Positions 1,875 to 25,946 of a DNA stretch of 34,592 nt are shown piece by piece (position 1 is the first letter of the stretch; each line of letters opens with the position of its first letter). The position numbers and the translations under genes were made by a program. This DNA comes from Octopus bimaculoides (Eukaryota): positions 66,486,022 to 66,520,613 of the forward strand of contig NC_068982.1 of the NCBI RefSeq assembly GCF_001194135.2, in the 5' to 3' direction. A model generated the notes under the pieces. It made no database searches. It saw only the letters and a program-made list of their open reading frames with translations, and had not been told where the DNA came from.

Positions 1875-4061
1875 ATTTTGTTTCTCTCACTATGATACAT
1901 GGGATCTTTCTTAAAACCTTTTTCTTTTACACAAACGAAAAATAAATGAATCTAAATATTTTTTTTCAAACTTATTTCCATTACACTCAAACAAAAAAAT
2001 AATTTATGAATTTCTTTCTCTTTGAAAGTCCTCTCCCCACCCCCTCGGAAAAAAAATTCTCCACAAATTTCTTTATAATCGTAATCTATACCGTTTGAAA
2101 GGTATTTATATCAAATTTCATTGAAAGATATCCATTTTCCTAAAATCTATGAAGGAAAAAACCGTATCTTGTGAATTTTCCTCTTCCCACCTCTCCCCAC
2201 ATTTTTGTTTTTATTTATATTCGTTCGACCTTTGTGGTTTTCGTCACTGTTTTCGAATTTGGCCAATTAAGACCATAAAAAAGCTTCATCCACTCTTATT
2301 GTATGTATATATTACCTTATATTGTCCACTGTGAGGTACCAAAACATTTGACCACATCTCTGTGACTGGCCACTAACATCACTTTTTATTGGTGAGGTTT
2401 AAATGTAGTCTCTCTCCGCACATCAATTACATGTTTTGCTAAAGTTTTATCTTCTAAAATATTGTTTCATTCATAAATTGTTATTTTATATGTGATATAT
2501 GTCTCTTTCTCTCTCTCTCTCCCTCATCATCATCATTATCATCATCTTTTAACATCCATGTTCTATGCTGACATAGGTTGAATGGCTTGACAGGATCTAA
2601 CAGGTTTGATGTCAATTTTGGCATGGTTCCTACTCAAAATTAGTTTGTATATTTAAGATAAGGATGGATTGACAGATGATGGGGTGTTTCTCTGTAAAAC
2701 ACAGAAGACAACACTGTGATTCATTTGTAGATGCTTGTGCATTATTTGTTACTTCCAGAGATTTTCAATTGTGCTTTAAAGTGCAGTGGAGCTCTTCAGG
2801 TGGAAATGGGTTGTTGTGCTCATGGTTTTTGAAAAGATTTTATGTTAGCTCTATGTAACCTGATGTGTTGGTAGTAAAAAAATCTGCACATTATACAATT
2901 CTTTTTTTCAGGCATTTGGTCTTTAAAAGACAAAGACCTTTATTTCAGTAATTGCTTGCCTGCTCCTTTCATTTCACACTTATTACTTTTACTTTGCACA
3001 GTGTCAAAGAGAGGTGAGGTAAGTGATTTTATGAGTCTTTGAGAAATGCAAAACCCATGCTGGCTGATTCCTCATTCTTAGCTTTTGAATATTCTGTGAG
3101 ATATTCACAAATTTATTAACAATATCATATATGGTTTACAAGTGCACATATACTCAAAATGATGCTGAGTTGGTACTTTTGTTAATATACAAAACACATA
3201 CATACATATACACACACATAATCACACACACACAATGCAAGAGCAATGGAATAAGTATAAGACAAAGTAACGAGATTAAATTAAATGACTTTTCAATGCA
3301 GTGTCCCATCCTGGATACAGTTCAGTGATGAAGATCAATAAAAGAATAAAAAGACTAACTTGAAATAATAGAAAAAATTCAGTATTATGTGTATTATCAA
3401 TATTACTTTTATTTGATAATTATTTTGTTTGACGTTCGATGTTTTGGCAGACAGTGGGATGTTAAGAATGTGTGTTGATGAGTATGTTTACAAAGAGTAT
3501 ATGGGTTCAATTTCAAATTAATCCAGTCAAAGCAGTTTGTTCACTTGCTATATGCTCACTGGGTTACTTCAAGTTATGTATTTCACTGGGTTATTTCTAG
3601 CTGTATATTGTCTGTCCTCGTGGAATATTCATTAAAACAAACACATATATGAACTGAAAAGTAAACATATCGTTTGTAAACACTTTATAGACAATTCACT
3701 ATATTATACATAAATGATAACACACTACTTACTTCATCTGAGCACACCACACTAAATCATAACATACCTGATTCATTATATTTATATATCAATGGTAACA
3801 CACCAATAACTTCATCTTAATACACAATATTATACTATAACATACCATATACACACATACATACGTTAAGATCACCAGCATTCTCTCTCTCACACACACA
3901 CAGCTTCTCGTATTTGGATCACCGCTTCTTTCCCCTTTTGTTATCTCCCCTTTTTCTTAGCTCTCCTGTGAGAACTTTCTGTCCGGCAGTCGCCATGATA
4001 GATCGCTGACCACAACATTCAATTTTTTTTCTCCGTGTTTTTCTCCTTGTTTTCTCCTTAT

Positions 4062-5100: not shown

Positions 5101-5103
5101 GAT

Positions 5104-5641: not shown

Positions 5642-5689
5642 CAAAGTAGTGCACTAGTAGAATAATTAGAATGTCAGACAAATTGCCTA

Positions 5690-5841
5690 ACGGTATTTCT
5701 TCCAACTTATTACTTTCTCATTTCAAATTCTACTGGAGTCAACTTTGCTTTTCACCCCTTCAGGTTCAGTAAAATAAAGTACTAGTGAAGTACTGAAGTC
5801 AATGATATTGACTAACACATCTCAAAATTGCTGGCCTTGTG
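5690..5841 (+). mobile_element. SINE family A, partial copy
   Basis: GGAGTCAACTTTGCTTTTCACCCTTCAGG...AAAATTGCTGGCCTTGTGCAAAAATTCAAAATC followed by (ATT)n. Confidence 0.7.
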
Positions 5842-5858
5842 CAAAAATTCAAAATCAA

Positions 5859-5859
<1 letters not shown>

Positions 5860-5931
<72 letters not shown>

Positions 5932-5933
5932 AT
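5860..5933. repeat. Compound (ATT)n(GTT)n microsatellite
   Basis: Directly visible. Other (ATT)n arrays lie at ~6755-6806, 9985-10060, 10190-10255, 10477-10517, 10737-10800 and 24787-24835. Confidence 0.95.
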
Positions 5934-5934
5934 T

Positions 5935-6486
5935 GAGTGAGAGACCAATGCATGCTATCAAAGTGACACTGGGGTACAAATATATGAGACCCAATATACC
6001 CAGCATGACTACCCATCTGATAAGGGTACACCAGGCACATACATCACAACCATATATGTGCAATATGGTGATTTCATATCAAGGTAAACAGTGCTTGACC
6101 TTGCAGGTGGGGGCCTAGTTAGAATTTTTTTCAGATCAAGTAGCCCATCCCACTCAAAAGGTCTCTGAATAGGATTTGTGTACAGCTGATGAACGAGACA
6201 CCTATGTTTCCAGAGGTGAATTATTCAAACCCCAAAGAATCCCTCTCAACATATGGCTATGATGCTGCCCTACTACCCCTGCTCATGATAAGAGATGCAC
6301 ATATAGTCAGCCACTAAGGGACATACTTAACTGGTTAAGGTCCAGCAACTGACTAGTGAATCTGTGGTATTGAGCAGAATATTTGCTGTAGCCCATCTGT
6401 TGCACCAAGACAAAACATGATAATACTTCCAATCAGTTAAGATTAGAAGCCATGAGAGCCACTGCTTGGTACAGCATTGGGGCATT
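5935..6486 (-). mobile_element. ~550-bp interspersed element, copy 1, flanked by (TTA/TTG)n
   Basis: Collinear over its whole length with 9436-9985, with the same two ends. Strand is inferred from an assumed (AAT)n 3' tail. Confidence 0.8.
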
Positions 6487-6592
6487 TATTATTATTATTA
6501 TTATTAAATTCAAATTACGACAAACGTAAACAAACAAACGAAGTTTGCTTTTAGAGGCGTTGAGATGTCTTAGAAAGTTAAAGAAGTGGTTT

Positions 6593-6744
6593 TAAATTCT
6601 CAATCGCAGGATAATGCTAATAATATAGCCTGAACAGGATAAACTACCCCTATTTTGCAGAAAAAAAGTGTAGGTGGTTAGCTGTGGACTCGAACTCACA
6701 TCTCCGTGATTACGCGTCAGCATTATCATGCGATTGAGAATTTA
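6593..6744. mobile_element. 152-bp element with 26-bp terminal inverted repeats
   Basis: TAAATTCTCAATCGCAGGATAATGCT (6593-6618) versus the reverse complement of 6719-6744: 25 of 26 match. A B-box GTTCGAGTCC lies inside on the minus strand (6686-6695). Confidence 0.6.
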
Positions 6745-6751
6745 CAATCAC

Positions 6752-6805
<54 letters not shown>

Positions 6806-6992
6806 GTATCTCTCAATGTCTTGAGCCCTTGTGACAAATGAAAAAAAAATCATTATCAATGTTATTATTATTAGCATTGTAAAATAAGAAAGAAACCCCT
6901 CAGCAGTAAGTCTCCATCAAAGACTATTTCAAAATATAAAATGGGCTAATTCAGGTAAGGTAAAACTTAAAGAAACAAAACATTTTGATTAC

Positions 6993-7123
6993 TTACTCAC
7001 AAGTGGCACCACAATTAAGTGCCATATAATTGAAGTAAGCTGTATCAGGTATACAGAACTGGCGATCCCAATTTTGGCAACAGGGGTCTTTGTCAGAACG
7101 GCAAAGTGTGAAATTAAAGGGTC
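6993..7123 (-). CDS. CAP gene probable last coding exon: ShK/ShKT-like Cys-rich domain
   Basis: Acceptor ctcttatatttAG; phase 1 start. Translates (R)PFNFTLCRSDKDPCCQNWDRQFCIPDTAYFNYMALNCGATCE*, with TAA at 6995-6993. A perfect donor T|GTGAGT at 7001/7000 allows an alternative spliced continuation. Confidence 0.85.
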
Positions 7124-8171
7124 CTAAATATAAGAGTTATACTTGTTTCATTTAAGAAAATATGAAATTTTAGTTAAATTTTAGAAGAATATAATTGTAG
7201 TGATGTAACTTCTAAAGAGAACACAAAGATTTGCCATCCGAAGAGAGGATATATTGATCTGGATCAGCACTGGTACAATCAGAAACATGGCTTAGTGTTG
7301 GACTCATGATCATAAGACTGTGGTTTTAATTCCTGGACCTGGCAATACATTGTGTTTTTGAGCAAAAACATTTCATTTCATGTTGCTCCAGTCCACTCAG
7401 CTGGCAAAAATGAGTAATCCTGCGATGGAATGGTGGAGTGCATGCACCATGGAACCTGGAAATCTGGTCCTATGAGTCTATATGACTCGGGAAGGATCTT
7501 TATCCTTTATCCTCCTTTTAAAACACAGTTTTCAGCATCATTTTGCAGATCCTCTAATAACTAGTTTAGCAAGCACAGAGTAAGATGTGCTTAGCTGAAG
7601 AGATCTAATAGACTGAAATATGTCTCATTTTGTCAATCATACTTGTCAAAATCAGATTTCAATAATATTTGCATTATTTTAATGTATTTTTAATACTTAT
7701 TAGAATTTTTATTCACTCTAAGATGCAACTAATTTGATTGCTTACACCATTATCATCATAACATCTACATTTTCATACTTGCATGGGTCAGACAAAATTT
7801 GTTGAGGCAGATTTACTATGTCTGGATGCTTGTCCTGTTGCCAAGCTTCACCTGTTTCTAAGCAAGGCGATGTTTCCCTTATGGTTGGACATGTTTTCAT
7901 GAAATTTTGAAACCAAATGACACCACTTATATGATAGTGACACTTGTTTACAAATATTGCACAATGTCAAGGCAAGGAGTTACAAACACAGAAACACACA
8001 CACATGCATGTGCACATGTGCATACACACACACACACATCCTCATCGTTGTTGTTGTTGTCGTCATCATCATTTAACCTCTATGAACTATAGTGGTCATG
8101 GGTTTTATATATATATATACACGCACATATATGCATGTATGTATGTATGTATGTATGTATGCATGTATGTA

Positions 8172-8848
8172 TGATGAGCTTCTTTCAATTCTGCTAAATT
8201 CACTCTCAAGGCTTTGGTCAACCTGAGGCTATAGCAGAAAACACTTGTCCAAGGTGCTGATTACTGTGATTAAAACCTAAAAAAAACCCACATGGTTGGG
8301 AAGTAAATTTCTTAACCACAAAGCCACACGTGTTTCTACATGTGTATGTGCTTGTGATATCCTTCATTGGTGTGGGTGCTAGTATCACATAAAAGGCACT
8401 GATGCTGGTGCCACTGAAAAGGTACTAGTGATGGTGCCACATAAAAAGCATCCAGTACACTTTGTAGAGTGGATGGTGTTAGGAAGGGCATCCAACTGTA
8501 GAAATCAAGCTAAAATAGACTATGGGACCTGGTGCAGCCCTTAGCCTTGCCAGTTCCCATCAAGCTGTCCAACCCATGCCAGCATGGAAAACAGACGTTA
8601 AATGTTGATGATGATGATGATAGATGAAGTTACTTCTCAAATAATAATAAATGAGTTTTAAAATTTAATATAAGTATATTTACCAGGTGTAGGCATTGTT
8701 CTGCACTAAGAAGTTTGCTCCCCAACCACATGGTTTTGGGTTTAGTCCCACCTTGTGTAACACCTTGGGCTAGTGTCTTCTATTATAGCCATGAATTGAT
8801 CAAAGCTATGTGAGTGAATTTCATAAATGGAAACTGAAAGAAGCCTGT
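8172..8848. mobile_element. SINE family B copies 8172-8340 (-) and 8686-8848 (+), with a family C copy at 8375-8620 (+) between them
   Basis: B: ...CCAACCACATGGTT...CTATAGCC...AAACTGAAAGAAGCC then (TA)n. C: GGAAGGGCATCCA.CTGTAGAAA...CCAACCCATGC.AGCATGGAAA...GACGTTAAA(TGA)n. Confidence 0.7.
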
Positions 8849-8892: not shown

Positions 8893-9135
8893 NNNNNNNN
8901 NNNNNNNNNNNNNNNNNNNNNNNNNNNNNNNNNNNNNNNNNNNNNNNNNNNNNNNNNNNNNNNNNNNNNNNNNNNNNNNNNNNNNNNNNNNNNNNNNNNN
9001 NNNNNNNNNNNNNNNNNNNNNNNNNNNNNNNNNNNNNNNNNNNNNNNNNNNNNNNNNNNNNNNNNNNNNNNNNNNNNNNNNNNNNNNNNNNNNNNNNNNN
9101 NNNNNNNNNNNNNNNNNNNNNNNNNNNNNNNNNNN
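8893..9135. other. Assembly gap inside a (TA)n array
   Basis: N run flanked by TA repeats on both sides. Confidence 1.
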
Positions 9136-9320: not shown

Positions 9321-9353
9321 GGCAGTCAGGTTCCAGTCCTGGGTCACAATATT
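9321..9353 (-). CDS. CAP gene 33-nt linker exon
   Basis: Acceptor catttaatttccAG, donor C|GTGAGT; phase 1 to 1. Translates (K)YCDPGLEPDC(R). Two Cys; the frame fits both neighbouring exons. Confidence 0.75.
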
Positions 9354-11054: not shown

Positions 11055-11152
11055 TACATTGATTTCGTAAACAGCGAGTTCCTGGACTTAAGTTGCAGAG
11101 CTCACATGCTTCATAAGTTGATGGAAAGAATGGGTGTTCTGGATAATTTCCA
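11055..11152 (-). CDS. CAP gene exon (GN motif and Cys-rich hinge)
   Basis: Acceptor tttatctttctcAG, donor A|GTAAGT; 98 nt, phase 2 to 1. Translates GNYPEHPFFPSTYEACELCNLSPGTRCLRNQC, the CRISP-type hinge C-x2-C...C-x4-C. Confidence 0.92.
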
Positions 11153-11379
11153 CTGAGAAAGATAAACTGACATCAAACTCAGAAATCAATTTGAGTACCA
11201 ATTATAGTTAGCTTGCTTTTTTTATTTTTTTTATTTCTCTATTTTATGTAATCTTCCAGTTACATAGAATAAAGAATAAGTAAAAAATAAATTGAACAGG
11301 CAATTAGAATATGTATAAAATATTTAGAAAATTATGCAGAACACTTATTGAAAGGAGAGAAAATTGCTGTTTTCCTTAC

Positions 11380-11498
11380 GGTGGGGAATAATCACATACA
11401 TATATCCACCATTGTTTTTCTGTGGTACCATCAGAAAATTGAAGACTATCACAGAACTGTTGACCACAACCAACTTTATTAGTTTCATACCATATTAA
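11380..11498 (-). CDS. CAP gene exon (W..T..VGCG and YVCDY.P motifs)
   Basis: Acceptor ttctttattgcAG, donor CC|GTAAGG; 119 nt, phase 0 to 2. Translates LIWYETNKVGCGQQFCDSLQFSDGTTEKQWWIYVCDYSP(P), matching the CAP1/CAP2 signatures. Confidence 0.95.
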
Positions 11499-12011
11499 CT
11501 GCAATAAAGAACTGAGTATTTAAAAAAAAAAAAACCTTTATTTGGAGCAATCAGTGAAGTTTTACTTACAAGACTTCAAAAGTTGGATTTAATATTTATG
11601 CACTTTCACTGCTAAACTTACTTAAGCAAAAAAAAAATGTTCATTAATGAAGGCCCTGATCCAAACATTAAATACCCCCTTCTCTTCATAATGCACATAC
11701 TTAAGCATAAATATTATTGTTCCACAAGGAAAAAAATAAATAACCTTGTAGAAGTAAGGAATAAGTATAAAACCCATAGATTTTCTTCTTATTCCTTATT
11801 TCTTCTTTTCTTTTTCTGATTTTTTAGTGTCTTATTTTCGTTGTGTACTTTCATTGGGACAACCTGGCTGAGTTCTCTATGTCTTGTTAATGTACAAAGT
11901 TTTAGTTTGGTATTTTCAATTGTATTGAAAGTAAACTAAATTATATATGTGTGTATGTGTAGTATGATGGTGCTATTTTCTGTATGTTGTACATATGTGA
12001 GGCATGGACGG

Positions 12012-13210
12012 ATGCAGGTGTAGCTGTGTGGTTAAGAAGCTTGCTTCCCAGCCACAGAGACTAAGATTTGGTTCCCCTGCAAGACATCTTGGACAAATAT
12101 CTTTTACTATAGCCCCAAGCAAACCGAAGCCTTGTGAGGTAGAGTTGCCAAATGAAAACTGAAAGAAGCCCATTACATATGCATATATATGTGTATGTAT
12201 GTATATATAGATGCAATTTGAAATTCCCACCACTTACATAGGTAAATAGCGATAAACAGTCTTCTATGTACTATATTGGATACACAGTGTTCGTTTGGTA
12301 TGTTGATTTTCTGTTTACTGCTATTTATCTTGACCATATTATACTGATGAGTAGAGGTTGTATAATACTACAATAACTACGAAATCATGATCTTTAATTC
12401 AGTCTGTTTTTAAGGGGCTGGCTTTGAGAGTTGCATTTCCTTGCATTCGGTAAAAATGTGTTTTTTATGGTAGTCTGACCTTAGAGTCCCTCATAGCGTG
12501 AAGCATTATTGTATAGTAATGCCCTTATATAAATAAATACATGAATGTATGTATATTCATTCCTCCTCATCTTGACATTGCATGAGAGCTGTAAGTGAAT
12601 GTCACTGTCATACGAGCAGTATCATTTATTCCCAAAACTCATTATAAATATGTTTGACCATGGGGAAAATAACATCTTGCTTGGAAACAAATGAGGGTTG
12701 GTGACAAGAAGGATATCCAATCATAGAAAATCTGACCTGTGCAAAAGTAAATGATGATGAAGCAATGATGATTATCTGTTATCTGGAGATAATCCTTGGG
12801 TGATGAAAATCATTAGTGTTTCTTTTTACTTGTTTCAGTCATCAGAATGCAGTCATGCTGGAGTACCAGCCTAAGGAATTTTGAGTTGAATGTATCAACC
12901 CCAGTACTTACTTTTTAAAAGATTGGTATTTATTTTATTGGTTTCTTTAGCCAAATTGCTAAGTTATAGGGATGCAAACACACCAGCACTGGTTTTCATG
13001 TGGTGGTGGGGAGGACACACACACACACACATACACACACACACATATGGCAGGCTTCTTTCAGCTTTCATCTATCAAATCCACTCATAAGGTTTTAGTC
13101 AGCTCAAGGCCATAGTAGAAGACACTTGTGCAAGATGCCACACAGTGGGGCTGAACCCCAAACCATCTGGTTGGGAAGCAAGCTTCTTACCACATAGTTA
13201 CTCCTGCATG
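12012..13210. mobile_element. SINE cluster: family B 12012-12175 (+) and 13045-13210 (-); family D 12828-13020; C-like 12540-12770
   Basis: Shared motifs with copies at 8172-8848, 20315-20640 and 21160-21875. Confidence 0.6.
12338..12398 (+). ncRNA. Type I hammerhead ribozyme with intact core and palindromic stem III
   Basis: ATTATA CTGATGA GTAG-agg-TTGTA-taatac-TACAA-taa-CTAC GAAA TCATGA TC/ TTTAAT. All conserved core nucleotides are present, the cleavage triplet is AUC, and stem I pairs at 5 of 6 positions. Confidence 0.75.
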
Positions 13211-13692
13211 TTATTGGTGAAATTATTAAAATGTTTAACAAAATACCTTGTGGTATTTGTTCTGGTTCTTTATGTTCTAAGCCCACTTGTAAAGACACTG
13301 GCGTCAAACTGTATCAGTCCTTGCTTTCACTTGGACAACATCAGGGGAGAGGAAAGGGCTGTTGAATGGCTAACTGCTACTCTTTCCTTTAAAAAAAAAA
13401 GAAAAAAAGCTTGCACAGCTCTGTGCCCTGGAGAATTTCCAGGTGCAGACACATAGCTAACTTTGACCAATGAAGGCCTTAGAGACATAGTGGCTTGTAT
13501 AAGAGATAAGAGAGACACAGGACAATAGTGACTGGAACTTCTCTGACTACCATTCTGTTGAATTCATTTTAACATGGTGCTAAACAACAAAAATTACCAC
13601 CATCACCGCTGTCACAGCTGCTGCTTTCATCGTTTCCACCGCTGCTGTCACCACCACCACCGCCACCGCCACCACCACTGTCATTGCCTTAC

Positions 13693-13846
13693 CTGTGTAT
13701 ATGCTTCACAGTTTTTACCTTTCCTACAACTATTTGTTGAATAAATATAGTTTGAAGACTGAGACTGGAATATTTCCACTATTTCTTCTGGCTTTAATTT
13801 TCCTTGTACTGCAACTGAATTCTGACCAACATTTGTCCCGTTCAGA
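13693..13846 (-). CDS. CAP gene exon (GQN and xYTQ motifs)
   Basis: Acceptor cttctttatttcAG, donor CAG|GTAAGG; 154 nt, phase 2 to 0. Translates LNGTNVGQNSVAVQGKLKPEEIVEIFQSQSSNYIYSTNSCRKGKNCEAYTQ. Confidence 0.92.
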
Positions 13847-14519
13847 CTGAAATAAAGAAGGTTTTGATGGCCCATGAAAGGCCAACAGAAAATATTGCAT
13901 TATTTTAAACGTTTGAACATTTGTTTGTTATTTAGACAAACTGGTAGCTACTTTAGATAAAGGTTTGAATGAGTTCATGAAGTCAGTATGCACACAAGCA
14001 CACACACACACATACACACACATGCATATGTGTATGCCTGTGTGTATGCATGTGTGGGTATGTGTATGCAAATGTGTTGGTGTAAACTGATAAATAGAAT
14101 TGACACATAAGTGTATGCGTGCATCTGTGTGTTGGAGTGTATTGTGCATCTGTGTATGTGTGCACATGTACACACAAGTACGTGTGTGTATGTCTTTCCC
14201 CTTCAAATTTCTAGAATAATGAGGGTGTGTGACTATATCAATATGAGATGAAAATAAAAAGCCACATTCAAACAGAAATACTGTGGGATTTCTGTATGAC
14301 TCACTTATCTTCCTATATCTGTTTACACCAATGTCCTCTTTGCATTTTGCATTTTATGAGAATAGTGAAACAAGACACAGTATTATTATTGATTTACTTA
14401 ACTAAAACTCTTGAAGATGATGCTCCAACTGGCCACAATCCAATTATTGAAACCATTTAAAACATAAAAGAATGAAGATATAAGAAAAAATTAATGTATA
14501 TGTATACATAAACACTTAC

Positions 14520-14596
14520 AAGAAGAGGTTGCCTGGTCCAAAAACACATCGGTCAGCTTGGCCTTGGGCTAAAGAAGCAAGGGATTCATCCCATTC
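14520..14596 (-). CDS. CAP gene exon (WD..LA..AQ..A..C motif)
   Basis: Acceptor cattttgtAG, donor TT|GTAAGT; 77 nt, phase 0 to 2. Translates EWDESLASLAQGQADRCVFGPGNLF(F). Confidence 0.92.
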
Positions 14597-14699
14597 CTAC
14601 AAAATGATATTAGGAAATATCATAAGGACCAAGAAAGAAGGAACTAAAGAAAGAAAAAAGTGAGTGAGCATAAAAGAATTTATATAAATATACTCATGA

Positions 14700-14876
14700 A
14701 CACATACACATTCATATGTATGAATGTACATACATATATACATACATACACACATACATACACACATACATACATACACACACATACATACACACACATA
14801 CATACACACACATACACACACACACATACATATATGCATACATACATACATACATACACACATACATACATACATA
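14700..14876. repeat. (CATA)n/(CA)n compound microsatellite
   Basis: Directly visible; continues as (CATA)n at 15585-15628 beyond the LINE. Confidence 0.95.
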
Positions 14877-15584
14877 GTAACTAGGACACTCTATAATGAA
14901 ATCCATTGGAAGGATAATCTCAAGGACAAAGAAATAAAAACCCACAATATGGTAGAAGCCATAGCCACTCATAATAAAAAGGAATACTGGTGGAATGTAC
15001 CAGTGAAGACCTCAATAAAATGTAAGCACAACATACCTAATATAATGATTTGGGATAGAGAAAAGAAACTGTTCACAGTTGTGGAAATTAGCTGCTCAGC
15101 GGATGTTAACATAAAGGTGAAGATCAATGAAAAAGAGAACACCTATGCTGAACTATTGAGAAATCTGCAGTTACTCTATCCAGATTACAAGTTCAGGTTT
15201 ATGTCTGTAATTATTGGGGCCCTGGGATATGTAACACACTGCCTAAATACCAATCTTGAGAAATTAGGCTTCTCAAAACCAGAAAGGAGAAAGCTGATTC
15301 GAAGACTACAGATCCAATCCATCACTGGAACTGTAAAAATCTGTAAAACTTTTCAGAAGTTTATCATTTAAATATATCTGAGCATGTCTACATATGTAAC
15401 TATATGCATGAGAATACATACATAAAACATTCAAAGCTGCACATACATACATGCATACATACATACATACACACAAAAATACCTAGTTGTTGATGTTGAG
15501 ATTCCAATGAAGGGACCCTGGATCTAGGTTAGAAACCGGTTCTTTCTCTATTGGCAAAATATCTTGAAATAAACTGAATAATGA
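14876..15584 (+). mobile_element. 5'-truncated R4/Dong-clade (restriction-like endonuclease) non-LTR retrotransposon in a (CATA)n array
   Basis: Open frame 14877-15371: RTLYNEI...WWNVPVKTSIKCKHNIPNIMIWDREKK...VVEISCSADVN...EKENTYAEL...IIGALG...GTVKICK, a PD-(D/E)xK RLE with PD changed to PN. About 210 nt of 3' UTR follow, then (CATA)n; a CATA/CA array also lies on the 5' side. Confidence 0.88.
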
Positions 15585-15598
15585 CATACATGCATACA

Positions 15599-15629
<31 letters not shown>

Positions 15630-16432
15630 GTGGTAACCAATATATTAAGTGTAATGAGTCAAAACAAACTTTTAATCACTTGAAATTATATCTGTATTGA
15701 GAAAATAAGATTTAGCTTATAAAACAATTCTTGTAAAGAAATTGTCTATACATAAACTCATATGGCCAGTTTCCTCATGGACTGGACGCTGGTCCGTCCA
15801 GGAAGGGATATAGGCACAATAGAATCTGGGAAACTAGCGCTATGAATTTATATGATTTGTGTAGGATCGTCATTCTTTTACTCTATCCTATATACAGATA
15901 AATTCTGAACATGTATGTAAGTGTATGTCTCCTTCCTCATATATGATACTTTTACCCTCAGATCAATCTCACCAACCATTGTTAATTCCCTTTCTAACAA
16001 ACCAAAGGGACACAATTCTTATCACTTTTTCCTCCAAACTTTCCTTTTCTTATTTCTTTCTCTTTTATCCATTTTTCATTTTTTTCTCATTATTTGTTGC
16101 TTTCACACAGGGAGCAGCTATGTTTATTTTGACCATTGTACCATCAGATTATGAAACTTATACTTACGAACATTTAAATCTCGTATTTATTAAATCATAT
16201 ACATATAATATATGCGTGTGTGTGTGTGTGTGTGTGTGTACAGCAGCTATGTTGGGGCATTGCCTGTGTTATTGCTACTCTTAGTGCAACACTCCGTCTG
16301 CATTTGACTTTTGGTGAATGTGTTTGATATCAATACCATGAGTCATGAGTCCTCTTATCAATATGTTCACTTGTCTTAGATTTCCGATTCTAGAATATGT
16401 ATGTATGTATGCCTGCATGTATATGTACACGG

Positions 16433-16478
<46 letters not shown>

Positions 16479-16556
16479 GTATATATGTATACATATACAT
16501 ATATATACATACAATGTGTATATAGATACGCGCGCGCGCGCATACATGCATATGTA

Positions 16557-17398
16557 TGGATCTAGTTAGTTTGGCTGCCAGCATTTCAAAAATTAAAGTT
16601 TATCAAAACTTTTAAAATTTGGCATATTAATATGCTTTTCCAAGCTGAATTGCTGGAGTTATTTCACTTTTTCCAGAAAAATGTTTTTAAAAAGTTGTAG
16701 CGGTTTACAGTTTGATCGTTTTCACCCAGTCAGGAAACAGGATTTGAAAGATGTCATTTTGTGCGTGACTGCACGTGTTGTCAACATTCTGAAAATAGCA
16801 CGTATTTTTATATGAAACTGTAAACAAATCAAAGAATTTAGAATTTTCAGAACATTTTTGAAAATTTGTACTCTACACATGGGAATCCATACGATTATGC
16901 AAATAAAAAGAGATCTTTCTGATTTGACGGGCACCACTTGCTTTCTTAACGAAACACTTTCAAACTTGGGAGACTGGTAGAATGTGTCATATAAAGTTTT
17001 AAATGGGTGAGGGCGTGATTTAAGGCCTATTTAGGTGTTATTTTTTAGCACATTTTCCGACCAGGTTACAAGCAACAGATGGGCATAAGCAACAGAATAT
17101 ATCGTCAACGCATTTGGCATCGCTTAGAATATATTTGGGAACACACATGCTTTCTCGCTGACAAAAGAGTTCTCATGTTTGACTTGTTACTATGGAAACA
17201 AGTATGAATGTGTCTGTGGCTTACGATTGGCTAAAATTACCCAAAATTTCTAAACTTTAATTGCTACTAACTTATTTATTGATTTATAGCAGAAATGATT
17301 TCCACGTCATTCTTTAACCTATAAAAGTGTATCATTACACTGAATATGAAATCAATTTGAACAGAAAATAATGCTGGCAGCCAAACCAACTAGATCCA
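16557..17398. mobile_element. ~840-bp MITE-like non-autonomous DNA transposon with TIRs and TA flanks
   Basis: TATGGATCTAGTTAGTTTGGCTGCCAGCATT (16555-16585) versus the reverse complement of 17370-17400: 30 of 31 match. TA on both sides suggests Tc1/mariner type. No ORF. Confidence 0.8.
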
Positions 17399-18477
17399 TA
17401 TATTTATATATATACAAATAATAAATGAGTATATGCATATATACGTACATGTATGTACATACCTACATCTACATGTATATATAGATGCATATCTGGGTAC
17501 AGGACGTTGCAAAAAAAACGTGGACAAAATGGTAAACAGAATACAGAAAACACACAGGCCACATAGAGAACATTTCCTTCATCAGCTGCCACCATTCTAA
17601 AACTAAGCGTTTCGAAGAGTTAAGGCAGGACGCATCGTTAGAATGGCTCTTCCCACGGACCACAAATTAAATTTGTACCATGGAGGAATGTAGTGGCGGA
17701 CAGAAAACAAGACAGGAAAACGAAACAGTGAAAACAAACAAAAAAGGCTATACGGCCAGACGTGAAAAAATATGTGTATATATATATTACAGCACACACA
17801 AACACATATATACTTTGACATACACACGCATACACATGCACGTATACATTTGGATATATGTATACAGAGAGAGAGAACGAGAGGGAGTGAGAGTGTGTGA
17901 TGTCTGGTTTTACAAACAAAGCAGAAGAGCGGGCCACCTGTATTCTTATAATGACGATATTACAATAGATAAGAATGAAACATTATTCCAGTTAGTGAAA
18001 AACGTTGATTAATCTCTAGGGTAATGAACAACACTTAATCTTATCTTACCCATATACACTTTAGCTTATATAATTGGGTTTCACCCTCTTAGGACATCTG
18101 TTACTCCATATTTTAAGTTTGTGTGTGGATAAAGAGTGAATACCCTTGAATGCGTACATTTATAAACATACTTTTTGCTTTGAAACTCGTTGTGAAGTCC
18201 GTTTTGTGTTTAAATCATTGTGTTCTATCATCAGAACGAAATTGTGAACCGTTGGTATAGTTAGTCCTTGAGTGGTTTTTATTAAAGTATTTTCTTTTTA
18301 GTTCAACTGATTATTGCTGACTTATCAAGGGTATCTAGAAAAGTAAATCAGAGAGAGAGAGAGAGAGAGGCTTACGTTTCTTTTGGATTACTTTAACTTC
18401 TCTAATACTAAATGGTCCGAAGACCACGTTTTCTCGGGAAAGTTGCTGCTTGAACAAAGGGCAAGTAGAATGTACTG

Positions 18478-18735
18478 GGATCTATTCGGTTTGGCTGCCA
18501 CCATCAATTCTATTCGAAGTGATTTCATATTCAGTGTAATGATACACTTTTATAGGCTAATTAATGACGTGAAAGTAATTTTTGCTTTAAATCAATAAAC
18601 AAAGAATTATTAGCAATTAAAGTTTGAAAATTCTTGTAATTTTAGCCAATCTTAAGCCACAGACACATTCATGCCTGTTTCGATTGTAAGAAGTGGAACA
18701 TGAGAACTATTTTGTCTGCGAGAAAGCACATGCCT
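18478..18735. mobile_element. Diverged, inverted partial copy of the right end of the 16557-17398 MITE
   Basis: GGATCTATTCGGTTTGGCTGCCACC...GATTTCATATTCAGTGTAATGATACACTTTTATAGG...GCGAGAAAGCA aligns to the reverse complement of ~17140-17398. Confidence 0.75.
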
Positions 18736-19554
18736 GTAGCCATAGTATCAAGCGAAACCGAGCAGTCTTTGAAAAGTCTTTTATCTGTGAGGAAGCACGT
18801 GTTGATAAATTTGATGCTGTGTTTCGTGTGATTATGGTAGCAAGCTCCAGTAACTTCGCTTCTATTATGGAAACATTGAAAACAGAGGAGGATGTGTTTA
18901 AAATTAAAACCGAAAGTTAGAAATACACTCAGTCAAAAATATTTTGTAATGTGCTGCTTATTGCATTCTTAAATGTTTGTTTTTTAAGCACATTTTGTTC
19001 ACTCTTATTTTCATATATAACATATAAACATGTACATCTTTAGGAACATTGTCATTTCATAAGATTTTGCAGGCAAATTTTTAAATTAACATAAACATTT
19101 ATTTACATGAAAGAAAATTACCGGAGAACTTTCATCTAATTCTTCCAAATCTTTCTCCTAAAAATTGTAAGGTGTTTATCGCAATTGCATTAAATGCATA
19201 ATATATATATATATAATTATGTTGGTAGGGTAAAATCCAAGCTGTGTCCACTTGAAGGGCATCTACTTATTTCAGTATGTAGTTCTTGTATTGATATGAG
19301 GTACATATTAAAGATGAAAATTCTAGAAACATATATATAAAGGTTACCCAGGTTTTCGCATCCACAAGGCCTTAGCTTTACATACATTTCGTCAGACACC
19401 GGCCATTAGGGCCTGACGAGACGTGTAAAGCCAAGTGCTTTATAGACGCAAAACTCAGGATAATCCTATGAACCAGCCATAATTATCTGTATCTAAATAC
19501 TCTAACGCTCTATAACTTAGAATGTGCTTTTCTTTCGGATTTATGATCTACTGA

Positions 19555-19557
<3 letters not shown>

Positions 19558-19647
<90 letters not shown>
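19558..19647. repeat. (TA)n(TG)n microsatellite
   Basis: Directly visible. Other arrays: (TATG)n ~20225-20300, (CA)n ~24060-24088, (GA)n 25947-25995. Confidence 0.95.
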
Positions 19648-19649
<2 letters not shown>

Positions 19650-20314
19650 GATTCAGTAGGGTCAATGCTCCAAAAACCACCATAAACTCATGATAAAGAT
19701 AAACCGTCCATCAGGAGATGTGAGACCTCCTGATGGATTTATTTTTTCTCTATGATTCTCGTATGATTACAGCCATTTCATAACTTTCATTATGTAATTT
19801 TATTAATTTCAGTATGCAAATTTTTACGTACATGCTTACATCGATATGTATAGTCAGTGTATTCAATTGTATATTCGCCAATTATTACAACTAAAGAAAG
19901 TTAATTCATCATATCACCGGAATATCCTGAGTACATCTATAATTCAATACGTTATATACATATGTGTGTGGGGGTGGAGTGGCGAGTGTGTGGGTATACA
20001 CACACACACACACAGAGGCGGGTATGCACCCGTAAAAACTCTCTTTTGCTTTTGCTTTCGCTAAAAATATTGATCCACCTAGTTTAGTGGATTAAGGTGG
20101 GAGACAAAGATTATAACAACCGCCCTTCCCCACGCTGATTTGTACTACAGCCAAGATTGGACATCCCAGCATTTGAGAGTTTCTAGATTACTTTGTTATC
20201 AATCTCTTAAGCGACAAATATACATATACAAACACATACACATGTATGTATGTATGTATGTATGTATGTATGTATGTATGTATGTATGTATGTATGTATG
20301 TCTTTCCTTTCCTT

Positions 20315-20643
20315 TGCTTGTTTCAGTCATGAGGCTGCAGCCATGCTGGGGCACCGACTTGAAGAATTTTTAGACGAATGAATGGACCCCAGTACTTTTT
20401 AAAACCTGGAACTTATTCTATCGATCTTTTTTGCTGAACCACTACGTTACGGGGACGTAAACACACTAACACTGGTCACACACACACACACACACACACA
20501 CGACGGAGTTCTTTCAGTTTCCGTCTATCAAATCCACTCACAAGGCTTTGGTCAACCCGAGGCTATAATTGGAGGCACATGCCCAAAATGGTACACTATG
20601 GTTTTGAACCTGAAACTATGTACCTCGAACCATGGAAGCAAGC

Positions 20644-20674
<31 letters not shown>

Positions 20675-21875
20675 AATTAATTTTAAAATAATTTGTATTC
20701 TGAGAGAATTACTCTGGTTATAGAAATATAAATCGTAAAATATTAATATGCATGTGAGCTGCAAGGAAATATGGGTCCTAGTTGTTTGTAGTACTAATCA
20801 TTGGTAACTGATATTCTACTGAATGAGATTTAACTCTGGTCTTACCATTAATAATAGATTGGCACCGTTGATAGCTTCTCGATATTTCTGGTGAGTCGCC
20901 AAAATACGTCCTTTCTCGAAAGGTCGAAATTTCGACCTTGACAATTGCCCAAACACTCCACGTCTTCGAAGTGCTTCTGGTAAAGAACCATCCTCAGGGA
21001 GTCGTATCATCTGGTCTCTTTTGTCCAACAACTGACTGTAAAATTAGTTAAGATATAATAATGATTGATTCTTCAAACAAACATTTGAGGATGAGTGTTA
21101 ATATATTTTACCATCACTTATCATTCACCATTTGATTTCTCTCGTTTATCTGTGCAGTTAACAAGGTAGCTTTGCAACCACCTGATTTTAGGTTCAGTCT
21201 CACGGCGCAGCAATTTGGGTAAGAGTCCTCAACTATAGCCTAGGCTGATTAATGTCTAGTGAGCAAATTTGGCAGGTAAGAACGTAGAAGCTTAAAGAAG
21301 CTCGTCACGCATGTGTGTACACACACACACACACACACGTGTATGTATGTATGTATGTATGTATGTATGTATGTATGTGTGTATGTACTTTATGGTTTAG
21401 CCTTGGCAAAGCGAGACTAAAAACCAATTGTTAAAAGACAATATACTTGTTCTTTAGAGAAAAGTGCCAGCTGAGTACAGAGCGTAGTATGAATTAATGA
21501 ATGGCAAAAGAATAGAAGTCACGTTATCAATTTCATTAGCTTACATCTGTTTCTATTATAAGAAACGTTGCACTCAAATTTGAGTGCCCGTGCGACCCCT
21601 TATTATTTGATCAGAGCCATTTTAATGAAGTGTATGTTTATTGCGGAAAGCAATATATGTGTGTGCGTATCTTTGTGTTAGTTTTCACTCCATTTGATAA
21701 CCAGTGTTGGTTTGTTCACGACCCCGCCAATAGGCGATTCAGCAACTAAGAGTGATAGAATAAGTACTACATTTAAAAAAAAGAATTAATGCTGGAGGTC
21801 GATTTGTCTGATTAACACTTTTTAGGAGGTGTCCTAGTATGGTCGCAGTCAAATGATTGAAACAAGTAAAAGAAT
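20315..21875. mobile_element. SINE copies: family D 20315-20480 and 21695-21875 (opposite orientation); family B 20505-20640 (-) and 21160-21310 (+)
   Basis: CTTGTTTCAGTCAT...GC.G..CATGCTGG.GCACC motif and its reverse complement; AAATCCACTCACAAGGCTTTGGTC. Confidence 0.6.
20846..21035 (-). CDS. CAP/SCP (CRISP/GLIPR-like) gene, most 5' exon identified: pro-region and start of CAP domain
   Basis: Acceptor ctaattttacAG, donor ATG|GTAAGA; 190 nt. Translates QLLDKRDQMIRLPEDGSLPEALRRRGVFGQLSRSKFRPFEKGRILATHQKYREAINGANLLLM. The end matches the CAP motif IL..HN.yR..v..aNM..m. An alternative AG 4 nt downstream (start 21031) is possible. Confidence 0.85.
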
Positions 21876-22384: not shown

Positions 22385-22489
22385 AATGATAATAATAATA
22401 ACAATAATAACAACAACAGCAACAATAATAATAACAATAATAATAACAACAATAATAATAACAACAACAATAACAACAACAATTGCAGC

Positions 22490-22542
<53 letters not shown>
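22385..22542. repeat. (AAT)n/(AAC)n microsatellite
   Basis: Directly visible; immediately 5' of the R4/Dong RT fragment. Confidence 0.95.
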
Positions 22543-23168
22543 GGATTTCATCAGCAAAAAAGATGGGCAACTGGAAGGCTTCGGGACCTGATGGAGTTCA
22601 AGGCTACTGGATCAAAAGATTTGGTGAATGTCATGCACGAATAGCTGCGCGACTCAACACCTTGTTAAATGCCGACCAAGTAACACCAGAGTGGTTGACA
22701 TTGGGTAGGACAGTACTGCACTTGAAAAGCATTGAAAAAGGCAATACGGTAGACAATTACAGGCCGATATCCTGTTTGCCACTTATGTGGAAATTATCGA
22801 CTGGAATACTCGCAGAGTCAGTGTACGTGCATCTGGGAAAAAAATGGAATCCTGCCACATGAGCAGAAGGTTTGCAAGTGTAAGTGCAGAGGTACCAAGG
22901 ATCAACTGTACTTAGAGACTGCAAGAGGAGGAAAAGTAACTTAGCCATGTAATGGATCGACTATCGTAAGGTGTACGATATGATCCCACTTTCTTGGATT
23001 ATGGAATGTATGAACCTATTTGGTATAGTATTGAATGTTGAGCGATTGCTTGGAAAAAGTATGGCGAATTGGAGGACTGACCTGACAGCATACGTAAGAA
23101 GTTTAGAGACAGTAGAAATCAGGAGGGGCATCTTCCGAGAGGACTGCCTCTCCCCACTGATCTTCGTT
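22543..23168 (+). mobile_element. Decayed R4/Dong-clade reverse transcriptase fragment
   Basis: NWKASGPDGVQGYW, NYRPISCLPLMWKL, EQK...GTKDQL, WIDYRKVYDMIPLSWI, RGIFREDCLSPLIFV. Contains a frameshift, a deletion and a stop. Starts right after the (AAT/AAC)n array and is cut by a SINE at the 3' end. Confidence 0.9.
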
Positions 23169-23171
23169 TAT

Positions 23172-23345
23172 TGGAGGGGATTAAGTCGATTACATCGAAC
23201 CCAGTGCATAACTGGTATTTTTACCACCTCCGAAAAGATGAAAGGCAAAGTCAGCCTCGGTGGAATTTGAAGTCAGAACATGAAGACGGACGAAATGCTG
23301 CTAAACATTTCGGCTGGCGCACTAACAATTCTGTTAGCTCACTGC
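23172..23345 (-). mobile_element. SINE family A copy truncating the R4/Dong RT fragment
   Basis: AAGATGAAAGGCAAAGTCAGCCTCGGTGGAATTTGAAGTCAGAAC. Confidence 0.75.
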
Positions 23346-25008: not shown

Positions 25009-25946
25009 NNNNNNNNNNNNNNNNNNNNNNNNNNNNNNNNNNNNNNNNNNNNNNNNNNNNNNNNNNNNNNNNNNNNNNNNNNNNNNNNNNNNNNNNNNNN
25101 NNNNNNNNNNNNNNNNNNNNNNNNNNNNNNNNNNNNNNNNNNNNNNNNNNNNNNNNNNNNNNNNNNNNNNNNNNNNNNNNNNNNNNNNNNNNNNNNNNNN
25201 NNNNNNNNNNNNNNNNNNNNNNNNNNNNNNNNNNNNNNNNNNNNNNNNNNNNNNNNNNNNNNNNNNNNNNNNNNNNNNNNNNNNNNNNNNNNNNNNNNNN
25301 NNNNNNNNNNNNNNNNNNNNNNNNNNNNNNNNNNNNNNNNNNNNNNNNNNNNNNNNNNNNNNNNNNNNNNNNNNNNNNNNNNNNNNNNNNNNNNNNNNNN
25401 NNNNNNNNNNNNNNNNNNNNNNNNNNNNNNNNNNNNNNNNNNNNNNNNNNNNNNNNNNNNNNNNNNNNNNNNNNNNNNNNNNNNNNNNNNNNNNNNNNNN
25501 NNNNNNNNNNNNNNNNNNNNNNNNNNNNNNNNNNNNNNNNNNNNNNNNNNNNNNNNNNNNNNNNNNNNNNNNNNNNNNNNNNNNNNNNNNNNNNNNNNNN
25601 NNNNNNNNNNNNNNNNNNNNNNNNNNNNNNNNNNNNNNNNNNNNNNNNNNNNNNNNNNNNNNNNNNNNNNNNNNNNNNNNNNNNNNNNNNNNNNNNNNNN
25701 NNNNNNNNNNNNNNNNNNNNNNNNNNNNNNNNNNNNNNNNNNNNNNNNNNNNNNNNNNNNNNNNNNNNNNNNNNNNNNNNNNNNNNNNNNNNNNNNNNNN
25801 NNNNNNNNNNNNNNNNNNNNNNNNNNNNNNNNNNNNNNNNNNNNNNNNNNNNNNNNNNNNNNNNNNNNNNNNNNNNNNNNNNNNNNNNNNNNNNNNNNNN
25901 NNNNNNNNNNNNNNNNNNNNNNNNNNNNNNNNNNNNNNNNNNNNNN
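25009..25946. other. Assembly gap (could hide an upstream exon of the CAP gene)
   Basis: N run between poly-A and (GA)n. Confidence 1.

What the first reader, a model, noticed from the sequence alone, without database searches (positions are those of the whole stretch)
11055..21035. CAP protein that has lost all four canonical cavity residues
Seen in the spliced translation: CVFGP where CxxxH is expected, GQNS for GENL, FQSQ for WxxE, and EAYTQ for GHYTQ; the N-terminal HN is also HQ. All structural Cys, WD, VGCG, YVCDY.P.GN and seven in-phase exons are intact, so this is not a pseudogene. Established: the His/Glu/Glu/His tetrad forms the metal-binding cleft of CRISP/GLIPR/PR-1 proteins; some members (GQN types, tetrad-less parasite VALs) deviate. 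Inference: a non-metal-binding secreted CAP whose function relies on lipid binding or on the ShK-like tail, possibly venom, reproductive or immune.
Basis: partly seen in the sequence, partly recalled or inferred. Interest (0 to 1): 0.75.

Follow-up and report, generated by a model that had tools for sequence, protein, structure and literature searches.

The report
Octopus CAP protein lacking metal-binding residues
This is a real, conserved octopus gene for a secreted CAP-family protein whose usual metal-binding residues (two histidines, two glutamates) have all been replaced; CAP proteins like this are already known from parasites and a horsefly, so it is a modest addition, not a surprise.

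Summary
The window is Octopus bimaculoides DNA. Its minus strand carries coding exons 2-9 of the RefSeq gene 'cysteine-rich venom protein TEL1' (XP_014771924.1, 300 aa). All junctions are AG/GT, and the spliced translation matches residues 29-300 exactly.

The protein reads HQKYR, CVFGP, GQN, FQSQ and EAYTQ where CAP proteins have HNxxR, CxxxH, GEN, WxxE and GHYTQ. The same residues occur in O. sinensis, O. vulgaris and Argonauta hians, so they are not assembly errors. dN/dS is 0.06-0.2, so it is not a pseudogene.

The changes are focused. Of 42 well-conserved CAP positions, 31 are kept, and the non-conservative changes cluster on the cleft motifs. The mature protein has only two histidines, neither at a tetrad position.

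Two corrections apply:
- Gln in GQN is the majority state among relatives and lies within the CAP4 consensus.
- The gene has nine coding exons, eight of them in the window.

The nearest non-octopod relative is a chiton protein that also lacks both histidines. Bivalve relatives keep them. About 7% of related CAP domains have lost all four residues.

Solved precedents are SmVAL4, HpVAL-4 and tablysin-15. Verdict: new member of a known kind; function and expression untested.

The parts
20846..21035 (-). Coding exon 2. Covers the last base of codon 28 to M91. Encodes an N-terminal extension with dibasic sites K33-R34 and R51-R52-R53, then helix alpha1 with the CAP3 motif as H76-Q77-K-Y-R80.
   Evidence: AG acceptor and GT donor, 190 nt. 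100% tblastn match to XP_014771924.1 residues 29-91. Codon positions.
14520..14596 (-). Coding exon 3 (E92 to F116/F117). Encodes helix alpha2 (EWDESLASLAQGQADRC) and the CVFGPGNLF loop. P112 stands where the first tetrad His is expected (codon 14536-14534).
   Evidence: In alignment A2 the bivalve and other relatives have CVFKH / CxWxH at this point.
13693..13846 (-). Coding exon 4. Holds the N119-G-T sequon; G124-Q125-N126 (CAP4, Q for the first tetrad Glu); F143-Q-S-Q146 (Q for the second tetrad Glu); the Y150/Y152 loop; C157 and C163; and E164-A165-Y-T-Q168 (A for the second tetrad His).
   Evidence: Column statistics.
11380..11498 (-). Coding exon 5. Encodes LIWYETNKVGCGQQFC...WWIYVCDYSPP, the central beta-strands, with the VGCG and CAP2-type motif intact.
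   Evidence: The model has strands of pLDDT 90-98 here.
11055..11152 (-). Coding exon 6. Encodes GNYPEHPFF and the four-cysteine hinge (C224, C227, C235, C240), the N228-L-S sequon, and H214, the only His outside the CAP3 motif.
   Evidence: The hinge aligns with the GLIPR1 hinge.
9321..9353 (-). Coding exon 7 (33 nt). Encodes the linker (K)YCDPGLEPDC with C243 and C251.
6997..7123 (-). Coding exon 8 (127 nt). Encodes the ShK-like cysteine-rich tail RPFNFTLCRSDKDPCCQNWDRQFCIPDTAYFNYMALNCGATC and the N255-F-T sequon. It is skipped in isoform X2.
   Evidence: Pfam ShK 14.3 bits, below the 20.9 cut-off. It aligns in register with relatives whose tails pass the cut-off.
3632..3653 (-). Last coding exon. 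Encodes (D)SYMCLF plus the TAA stop at 3634-3632. In isoform X2 the same exon is read in another frame (LHICVCFNEYSTRTDNIQLEITQ).

Best explanation
This is a functional, conserved octopod gene. RefSeq calls it 'cysteine-rich venom protein TEL1', XP_014771924.1.

Shown:
- The domain order is signal peptide, a roughly 50-residue basic N-terminal extension, CAP domain, four-cysteine hinge, and a divergent ShK-like tail.
- The CAP fold-determining residues are kept.
- The cleft has been specifically remodelled: His to Pro, Glu to Gln, His to Ala, plus N77Q, W143F and G164E. Gln occupies the GEN position, as in most relatives.
- These residues are held fixed under strong purifying selection across Octopus and Argonauta.

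Inferred:
- The cleft can no longer coordinate Zn2+ or Mg2+. Functions that depend on the tetrad in natrin, CRISP2 or Pry1 are therefore unlikely here.
- The protein instead acts through metal-independent binding.
- My preferred mechanism is that the CAP domain is a stable, glycosylated carrier or binding scaffold, and the ShK-like tail is the effector that engages a membrane target. This parallels the cysteine-rich domain of vertebrate CRISPs. The tail is the most constrained part of the protein.
- Skipping of exon 8 gives a tail-less isoform.
- Metal-independent sterol or fatty-acid binding, as in SmVAL4 and HpVAL-4, is the alternative or an additional activity.
For: - Gene model: eight AG/GT exons whose spliced translation equals residues 29-300 of XP_014771924.1. 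Exon 1, with MLLLSVCFIFFLLTSASA, lies just outside the window.
- Orthologues in O. sinensis, O. vulgaris and Argonauta hians carry the same P/Q/Q/A residues.
- Nei-Gojobori omega: 0.20 for O. bimaculoides vs O. sinensis; 0.056 vs Argonauta. By region, CAP is 0.066 and hinge plus tail is 0.029.
- Family and fold: Pfam CAP E=6.5e-12. AlphaFold core pLDDT is about 85-98. Foldseek top hits are GLIPR1 (TM 0.79 normalised to target), natrin and PR-1.
- Targeted change: 31 of 42 conserved positions are kept, and the non-conservative changes cluster on cleft motifs.
- The mature protein has only two His, H76 and H214. The loop CVFGPGNLFFLNGTNVGQN contains no His, Asp or Glu.
- The tail is the best-conserved region: 92% identity to Argonauta and 52% to chiton, against 82% and 41% for the CAP domain.
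- Tail cysteines align with ShK tails of relatives that pass Pfam's cut-off.
- Published precedent for metal-free but functional CAPs: SmVAL4 (PMC4118828) and HpVAL-4 (PMC5893428).
Against: - No coordinates of the model were available. I could not check whether E164 (which replaces the Gly of GHYTQ), E137/E138/E141 on helix alpha3, or H214 reach the cleft.
- The tail was modelled with low confidence (pLDDT 32-64).
- The tail is below Pfam's ShK cut-off and has seven cysteines with C-x3-C-x4-C spacing.
- There are no expression or protein data. The accessions were absent from the text-held supplements of one O. vulgaris posterior-salivary-gland proteome.
- dS against Argonauta is saturated (about 1.9), so omega is approximate.
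- CRISP2 needs Mg2+ for sterol binding (PMC11599453), which counts against assuming lipid binding survives loss of the tetrad.
Confidence: 0.6

Rival explanations
1. Metal-independent lipid carrier. The CAP domain itself is the working part. It binds sterols through the aromatic loop between helices alpha3 and alpha4 (the caveolin-binding motif) or fatty acids between alpha1 and alpha4, as shown for the tetrad-less SmVAL4 and HpVAL-4. The tail only targets or stabilises the protein.
For: - SmVAL4 keeps one of four tetrad residues, binds cholesterol, and complements yeast pry mutants (PMC4118828).
- HpVAL-4 lacks the histidines and binds sterol (PMC5893428).
- The octopus alpha3-alpha4 loop keeps aromatic Y150 and Y152.
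- The CAP core is under purifying selection, omega 0.066.
Against: - CRISP2 loses cholesterol binding without Mg2+ (PMC11599453).
- The loop is pinned by the C157/C163 cysteines, and I did not test it against a defined motif.
- The tail is more conserved than the CAP domain.
Confidence: 0.3
2. The cleft still binds a cation or has another activity through substitute residues. Candidates are E164 next to A165, the acidic face of helix alpha3 (E137, E138, E141), or H214.
For: - E164 is invariant in the four octopods and replaces a Gly conserved in 80% of relatives.
- Coordinates could not be inspected, so geometry is unknown.
Against: - There is no His at or near any tetrad position, and only two His in the mature protein.
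- The chiton orthologue has Ser, not Glu, at position 164.
- Carboxylate or amide side chains alone would be a very different and weaker site than His2Glu2.
Confidence: 0.08
3. Decaying or misassembled gene. The substitutions reflect relaxed constraint, a pseudogene, or assembly or annotation error.
For: - The Pfam CAP score (46.8 bits) is lower than in relatives (55-72 bits).
- The window has three assembly gaps.
Against: - The ORF is intact and all splice sites are canonical.
- The residues are identical in four genome assemblies of different species.
- Omega is 0.06-0.2.
- The gaps lie in introns.
- His to Pro and His to Ala are not single-base read errors of a His codon: the codons are CCA and GCA.
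Confidence: 0.02

Closest known systems
Liolophura sinensis (chiton) 'cysteine-rich secretory protein 2-like', XP_064616790.1
   Same: - It is the closest non-octopod relative: 45% identity, E=1.6e-57.
- It has the same length (299 aa) and the same order of CAP, hinge and ShK-like tail.
- It shares the CC doublet and C-x3-C-x4-C ending, and has 19 cysteines.
- Intron positions are the same at every junction I recovered.
- It shares HQ, F for W, and loss of both histidines.
- It groups with the octopods at 85% bootstrap in the NJ tree.

   Different: It keeps the second tetrad Glu (FNDE). It has Tyr and Asn where the octopus has Pro and Ala, and Ser rather than Glu at position 164. I have only a predicted protein for it.
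Bivalve CAP-ShKT proteins (Mytilus VDI51030.1, Mizuhopecten OWF49911.1 'peptidase inhibitor 16', Pinctada A0A194AJ68)
   Same: They share local motifs with the octopus protein: CVFKH.NL.F.NG..VGQN, HQ/HR, and F for W. They also carry a hinge and a cysteine-rich tail. In the NJ tree they are the weakly supported sister group (52%).
   Different: They retain H-Q-E-H (GHYLQ). They have long basic N-terminal regions.
SmVAL4 (PDB 4p27), HpVAL-4 (5wee) and tablysin-15 (3u3l): solved CAP proteins without the cleft histidines
   Same: They are CAP folds with the central cavity kept but the metal-binding histidines missing. They are secreted glycoproteins. All three appear as structural hits of the octopus model (PMC4118828; PMC5893428).
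   Different: They come from parasites or a blood-feeder and are distant in sequence (15-23% identity in the Foldseek alignment). They have no hinge or ShK-like tail. Lipid or leukotriene binding has been shown for them and not for the octopus protein.
Vertebrate CRISPs (natrin 1xx5, triflin 1wvr, CRISP2) and GLIPR1 (3q2r)
   Same: They are the best sequence and structure matches among solved proteins. GLIPR1 scores E=5e-17 and TM 0.79. They share the three-part plan of CAP domain, four-cysteine hinge and small cysteine-rich C-terminal domain.
   Different: They keep the His/Glu/Glu/His tetrad and bind Zn2+ or Mg2+. The CRISP C-terminal domain is the Crisp/ICR type, which was not detected here. 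The RefSeq name 'venom protein TEL1' reflects only a best-hit label.

Membership tests
CAP superfamily (Pfam PF00188) | Significant match to the CAP domain profile | tested here: met
   46.8 bits against a gathering cut-off of 21.1, E=6.5e-12, covering profile positions 2-117 of 117.
CAP superfamily (Pfam PF00188) | Alpha-beta-alpha sandwich fold | tested here: met
   In the AlphaFold2 model the CAP core has pLDDT of about 85-98. Foldseek gives probability 1.00 to GLIPR1, natrin, PR-1, P14a, Pry1 and GAPR-1. This is a prediction, not a solved structure.
CAP superfamily (Pfam PF00188) | CAP1 motif (GHYTQ..W) and CAP2 motif (..C.Y.P.GN) | tested here: inconclusive
   CAP1 reads EAYTQLIWYET. Y, T, Q and W are kept, but G becomes E and H becomes A. 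CAP2 reads YVCDYSPPGNY and is intact except for N to D, a variant found in 28 of the related domains.
CAP superfamily (Pfam PF00188) | CAP3 motif HNxxR and CAP4 motif G(E/Q)N(I/L/V), consensus as quoted in PMC4118828 | tested here: inconclusive
   CAP3 reads HQKYR: H and R are kept, N becomes Q. CAP4 reads GQNS: GQN fits the consensus, but the fourth residue is S.
CAP superfamily (Pfam PF00188) | His/Glu/Glu/His cleft tetrad that coordinates a divalent cation | tested here: not met
   P112, Q125, Q146 and A165 stand at the four positions. This is typical of the superfamily but not required for membership, because solved members lack it (PMC4118828, PMC5893428).
Vertebrate-type CRISP subfamily | Hinge with four cysteines following the CAP domain | tested here: met
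   C224, C227, C235 and C240 align with the GLIPR1 hinge and are invariant in alignment A2.
Vertebrate-type CRISP subfamily | C-terminal Crisp/ICR domain | tested here: not met
   The Pfam scan of the whole protein and of the tail alone gave no Crisp-domain hit. Only a weak ShK match appeared.
ShKT domain (Pfam PF01549) | Profile match above threshold and the six-cysteine pattern ending C-x3-C-x2-C | tested here: inconclusive
   The score is 14.3 bits against a cut-off of 20.9, E=0.062. The tail has seven cysteines and ends C-x3-C-x4-C. Its cysteines align column for column with tails of relatives that pass the cut-off: P0017 at 26.1 bits and P0035 at 40.6 bits. UniProt labels the O. bimaculoides and O. 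vulgaris entries 'ShKT domain-containing'.
Tetrad-less lipid-binding CAPs (SmVAL4 / HpVAL-4 type) | Absence of both cleft histidines | tested here: met
Tetrad-less lipid-binding CAPs (SmVAL4 / HpVAL-4 type) | Sterol or fatty-acid binding; aromatic caveolin-binding-motif loop between alpha3 and alpha4 | not testable with these tools
   Y150 and Y152 are present in the loop. Binding needs an assay.

The most novel reading that the evidence does not exclude
The octopod and chiton genes may be orthologues of one ancient molluscan lineage of CAP-hinge-ShK-like proteins. That lineage would have given up cation binding before chitons and cephalopods diverged and has been kept under strong constraint ever since. 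This would imply a dedicated metal-independent role driven by the unusual seven-cysteine tail, for example an endogenous or venom ligand of an ion channel or receptor. The conserved dibasic sites (KR, RRR) in the N-terminal extension would mark proprotein processing.
Probability: 0.25. Interest if true: 0.45.

Novelty: new member of a known kind. Interest (0 to 1): 0.25.

Why it matters
The role of the CAP cleft tetrad is still debated: metal-dependent signalling, sterol binding, or a proposed protease activity. A non-parasite animal protein would be a useful natural comparison if three things hold, as they appear to here. The fold, hinge and tail are conserved. Every tetrad residue is replaced. 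And relatives form a graded series: bivalve H-Q-E-H, chiton Y-Q-E-N, octopod P-Q-Q-A. Such a series could separate cleft-dependent functions from cleft-independent ones.

It also shows that the RefSeq label 'venom protein TEL1' carries no functional evidence. Beyond that it is an ordinary family member. It does not open a new kind of system.

Tried and rejected
1. Two word-indexed homologue searches returned almost nothing: one cluster for the single sequence and four proteins for alignment A2. The second was partly my own doing, because I set a strict E-value cut-off and the bivalve N-termini are low in complexity. The exhaustive HMMER search and a trimmed-alignment search were needed.

2. 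An apparent second, compact gene copy inside intron 1 of O. sinensis was an artefact. My BLAST database held two loci in one file. It disappeared when the loci were separated.

3. The first bootstrap tree run timed out. I redid it with my own distance code.

4. Model coordinates are not exposed, so the cleft geometry could not be inspected. Only secondary structure, pLDDT and Foldseek hits were usable.

5. Literature searches by accession and by the name 'TEL1' found nothing on this gene. The accessions were not in the supplements of a salivary-gland proteome paper.

6. Pfam and PDB scans of intronic ORFs that look like retroelement fragments were negative.

7. I could not search decapodiform (squid, cuttlefish) or Nautilus genomes. 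The genome collection on offer is prokaryotic, so the point at which the tetrad was lost within cephalopods is not resolved.

Full report
**What the sequence is**

The window is AT-rich, microsatellite-laden animal DNA with three assembly gaps. Six-frame translation of the minus strand between 11055 and 21035 shows five open segments. Each is bounded by AG and GT, and they splice into one 212-residue reading frame.

That protein is 100% identical to Octopus bimaculoides XP_014771924.1, 'cysteine-rich venom protein TEL1 isoform X1', 300 aa. It is 98% identical to the O. sinensis and O. vulgaris proteins and 81-83% identical to a partial Argonauta hians protein. The window equals positions 13409-48000, reversed, of a locus on O. 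bimaculoides chromosome record CM046602.1.

**Gene model**

Eight coding exons lie in the window, all on the minus strand and all AG/GT:

| Exon | Window coordinates |
|---|---|
| E2 | 21035-20846 |
| E3 | 14596-14520 |
| E4 | 13846-13693 |
| E5 | 11498-11380 |
| E6 | 11152-11055 |
| E7 | 9353-9321 |
| E8 | 7123-6997 |
| E9 | 3653-3632 (ends in TAA) |

- Their spliced translation equals residues 29-300 of the RefSeq protein exactly.
- Exon 1 encodes the signal peptide MLLLSVCFIFFLLTSASA and lies about 3.3 kb beyond the window end.
- Isoform X2 (XP_014771926.1) is reproduced by skipping the 127-nt exon 8. This shifts the frame in the last exon and removes the cysteine-rich tail.

**The observation**

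- H76-Q77-K-Y-R (expected HNxxR).
- C108-V-F-G-P112 (expected CxxxH).
- G124-Q125-N126-S (expected GEN).
- F143-Q-S-Q146 (expected WxxE).
- E164-A165-Y-T-Q (expected GHYTQ).

Alignments to solved CAP proteins place the first tetrad His of GLIPR1 and natrin in an insertion relative to the octopus loop. That loop, CVFGPGNLFFLNGTNVGQN, contains no His, Asp or Glu at all. The GEN, WxxE and GHYTQ positions align unambiguously with Q, Q and A. The mature protein has only two histidines: H76 of the CAP3 motif and H214 in the hinge.

**Are the substitutions real and under selection?**

The four octopod proteins come from four separate genome assemblies. All share P/Q/Q/A; Argonauta differs only nearby, with CVFEP and HRKYR.

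I extracted codons from the genomic loci and computed Nei-Gojobori dN/dS:

| Comparison | omega | Note |
|---|---|---|
| O. bimaculoides vs O. sinensis | 0.20 | 8 synonymous, 6 non-synonymous differences |
| O. bimaculoides vs Argonauta, whole | 0.056 | dS about 1.9, saturated, so approximate |
| vs Argonauta, CAP domain | 0.066 | |
| vs Argonauta, hinge plus tail | 0.029 | |

The codons at the former His positions are CCA and GCA, not single-base neighbours of CAY read in error. Pseudogene and assembly-error readings are therefore rejected.

**Is it unusual?**

An exhaustive HMMER search gave 3629 hits at E<=0.001. I aligned the best 150 representative proteins, 198 scorable non-octopod CAP domains, to the query.

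| Tetrad position | State among 198 domains |
|---|---|
| First His | kept in 75% |
| GEN position | Q in 100, E in 76 |
| Second Glu | kept in 90% |
| Second His | kept in 84% |

- Gln in GQN is the normal state of this branch and fits the published CAP4 consensus G(E/Q)N(I/L/V) (PMC4118828).
- Thirteen domains (6.6%) have none of the four canonical residues. Many of these sit in multi-domain proteins.
- The state is therefore a minority one, but it recurs.

Of 42 CAP positions with at least 60% consensus, the octopus keeps 31. The kept positions include H76, R80, W93, D94, all six cysteines, Y166, T167, Q168, W171, G178, Y205, P207, G209 and N210.

Of the 11 changes, four are conservative (A85G, M88L, V170I, N204D). 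Six of the other seven lie in the cleft motifs (N77Q, H112P, W143F, E146Q, G164E, H165A); the seventh is A172Y. The picture is a specific remodelling of the cleft on an otherwise intact scaffold.

**Fold**

AlphaFold2 with a 32-sequence alignment gave mean pLDDT 75.5. The CAP core was at about 85-98, with the expected order of helices and strands. The N-terminal extension and the tail were poorly defined.

Foldseek against the PDB returned GLIPR1 (TM 0.79 normalised to the target), natrin, PR-1, P14a, pseudecin, SmVAL4, Pry1, GAPR-1, tablysin-15 and HpVAL-4. I could not check whether E164, the acidic face of helix alpha3, or H214 reach the cleft. This is the main open point in the 'no metal binding' inference.

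**Relatives and history**

- The closest non-octopod is a chiton protein, Liolophura sinensis XP_064616790.1 (45% identity). It has the same length, the same tail with a CC doublet and C-x3-C-x4-C ending, 19 cysteines, and matching intron positions at the junctions I recovered. Its tetrad positions read Y-Q-E-N.
- Bivalve relatives (Mytilus, Mizuhopecten, Pinctada) share the local motifs CVFKH.NL.F.NG..VGQN, HQ/HR and F for W. They keep H-Q-E-H.
- In a neighbour-joining tree, octopods plus chiton group with 85% bootstrap. The bivalve clade is a weakly supported sister (52%).
- An unnamed marine metatranscriptome protein (P0027/P0158, Y-Q-Q-N) sits inside a different clade that is otherwise H-Q-E-H. 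It lost the tetrad independently.
- Other close relatives that carry names are annelid proteins.
- The likeliest sequence of events is: an ancestor with H-Q-E-H; loss of both histidines in the chiton and octopod lineage, either shared or parallel since the replacement residues differ; then loss of the second Glu in octopods.
- I could not examine squid, cuttlefish or Nautilus.

**The tail and other features**

- Alone, the last 60 residues score 14.3 bits on Pfam ShK, below the 20.9 cut-off.
- The tail's cysteines align column for column with tails of relatives that pass the cut-off: 26.1 and 40.6 bits.
- The tail is the best-conserved region. Identity to Argonauta is 92% and to chiton 52%, against 82% and 41% for the CAP domain.
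- The mature protein has 19 cysteines, an odd number.
- It has three N-glycosylation sequons: N119 in the loop beside the former first-His position, N228 and N255.
- The N-terminal extension carries dibasic sites (K33-R34, R51-R53). Argonauta shares the RRR, and the chiton has RHKR at the equivalent place.

**Mechanism**

- Shown: the gene encodes a constrained CAP-hinge-ShK-like protein with a signal peptide and without the tetrad.
- Inferred: it does not coordinate Zn2+ or Mg2+. It therefore cannot work the way natrin (Zn2+ and heparan-sulphate dependent signalling) or CRISP2 (Mg2+-dependent sterol and A1BG binding, PMC11599453) are proposed to work.
- Preferred reading: the tail is the effector, as the cysteine-rich domain is in CRISPs. 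The CAP domain is the scaffold, and exon-8 skipping gives a tail-less variant.
- Main rival: metal-independent sterol or fatty-acid binding by the CAP domain, demonstrated for the tetrad-less SmVAL4 and HpVAL-4 (PMC4118828, PMC5893428).
- Tissue and role (venom, reproduction, immunity) are unknown. No paper mentions the gene, and it was not in one salivary-gland proteome supplement.

**Verdict**

It overstates the rarity of the state: tetrad-less CAP proteins are established, and about one related domain in fifteen is in the same condition. This is a new member of a known kind, of modest interest. Its main value is as a natural comparison series for the role of the CAP cleft.

Noticed in passing
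window 6997-7123 and 3586-3653 (minus strand): RefSeq isoform X2 is reproduced exactly by skipping the 127-nt exon 8. The last exon is then read in another frame (LHICVCFNEYSTRTDNIQLEITQ), giving a CAP-plus-hinge protein without the ShK-like tail.
   Followed up: yes
window 20960-21022 (minus strand, exon 2): The extension between the signal peptide and the CAP domain has dibasic or tribasic sites: K33-R34 and R51-R52-R53, with R21-R22-K23 encoded in exon 1 outside the window. RRR is conserved in Argonauta, and the chiton has RHKR at the equivalent place. This may mark proprotein-convertase processing.
   Followed up: partly
window 13840-13842, 11092-11094, 7113-7115 (minus strand): There are three N-glycosylation sequons. 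N119-G-T lies in the loop next to the lost first His and is shared with Argonauta, chiton and scallop relatives. The mature protein has 19 cysteines, an odd number also seen in the chiton protein, which hints at a free thiol or a disulphide-linked dimer.
   Followed up: partly
window 1293-1874, 8893-9135, 25009-25946: These are three runs of N (assembly gaps). All lie in introns or downstream of coding exons of the CAP gene, flanked by TA/GA microsatellites.
   Followed up: yes
window 14724-15371 (+), 22386-23270 (+), 30554-31138 (+): These intronic ORFs look by eye like fragments of retroelements (reverse-transcriptase-like and endonuclease-like stretches). Pfam and PDB sequence searches gave no significant hit.
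   Followed up: partly
L003 (Argonauta hians) 2001-8033 and 8971-9018: The Argonauta orthologue spans about 6 kb, against about 34 kb in the two Octopus species. A short inverted copy of the exon-4 end (TCKQGRNCEAYTQ) lies about 1 kb downstream on the other strand.
   Followed up: no
L004 (Liolophura sinensis) 8214-8264, 8380-8430, 8781-8828: Three extra near-identical copies of the hinge-coding segment (CSYCNLDPASICERNQC) sit in the intron after the chiton hinge exon.
   Followed up: no
L001 4168-4887 (outside the window, upstream of exon 1): The upstream neighbour of the CAP gene is a 239-aa HAD-family hydrolase gene on the same strand. No second CAP gene lies within 10 kb on either side.
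   Followed up: no
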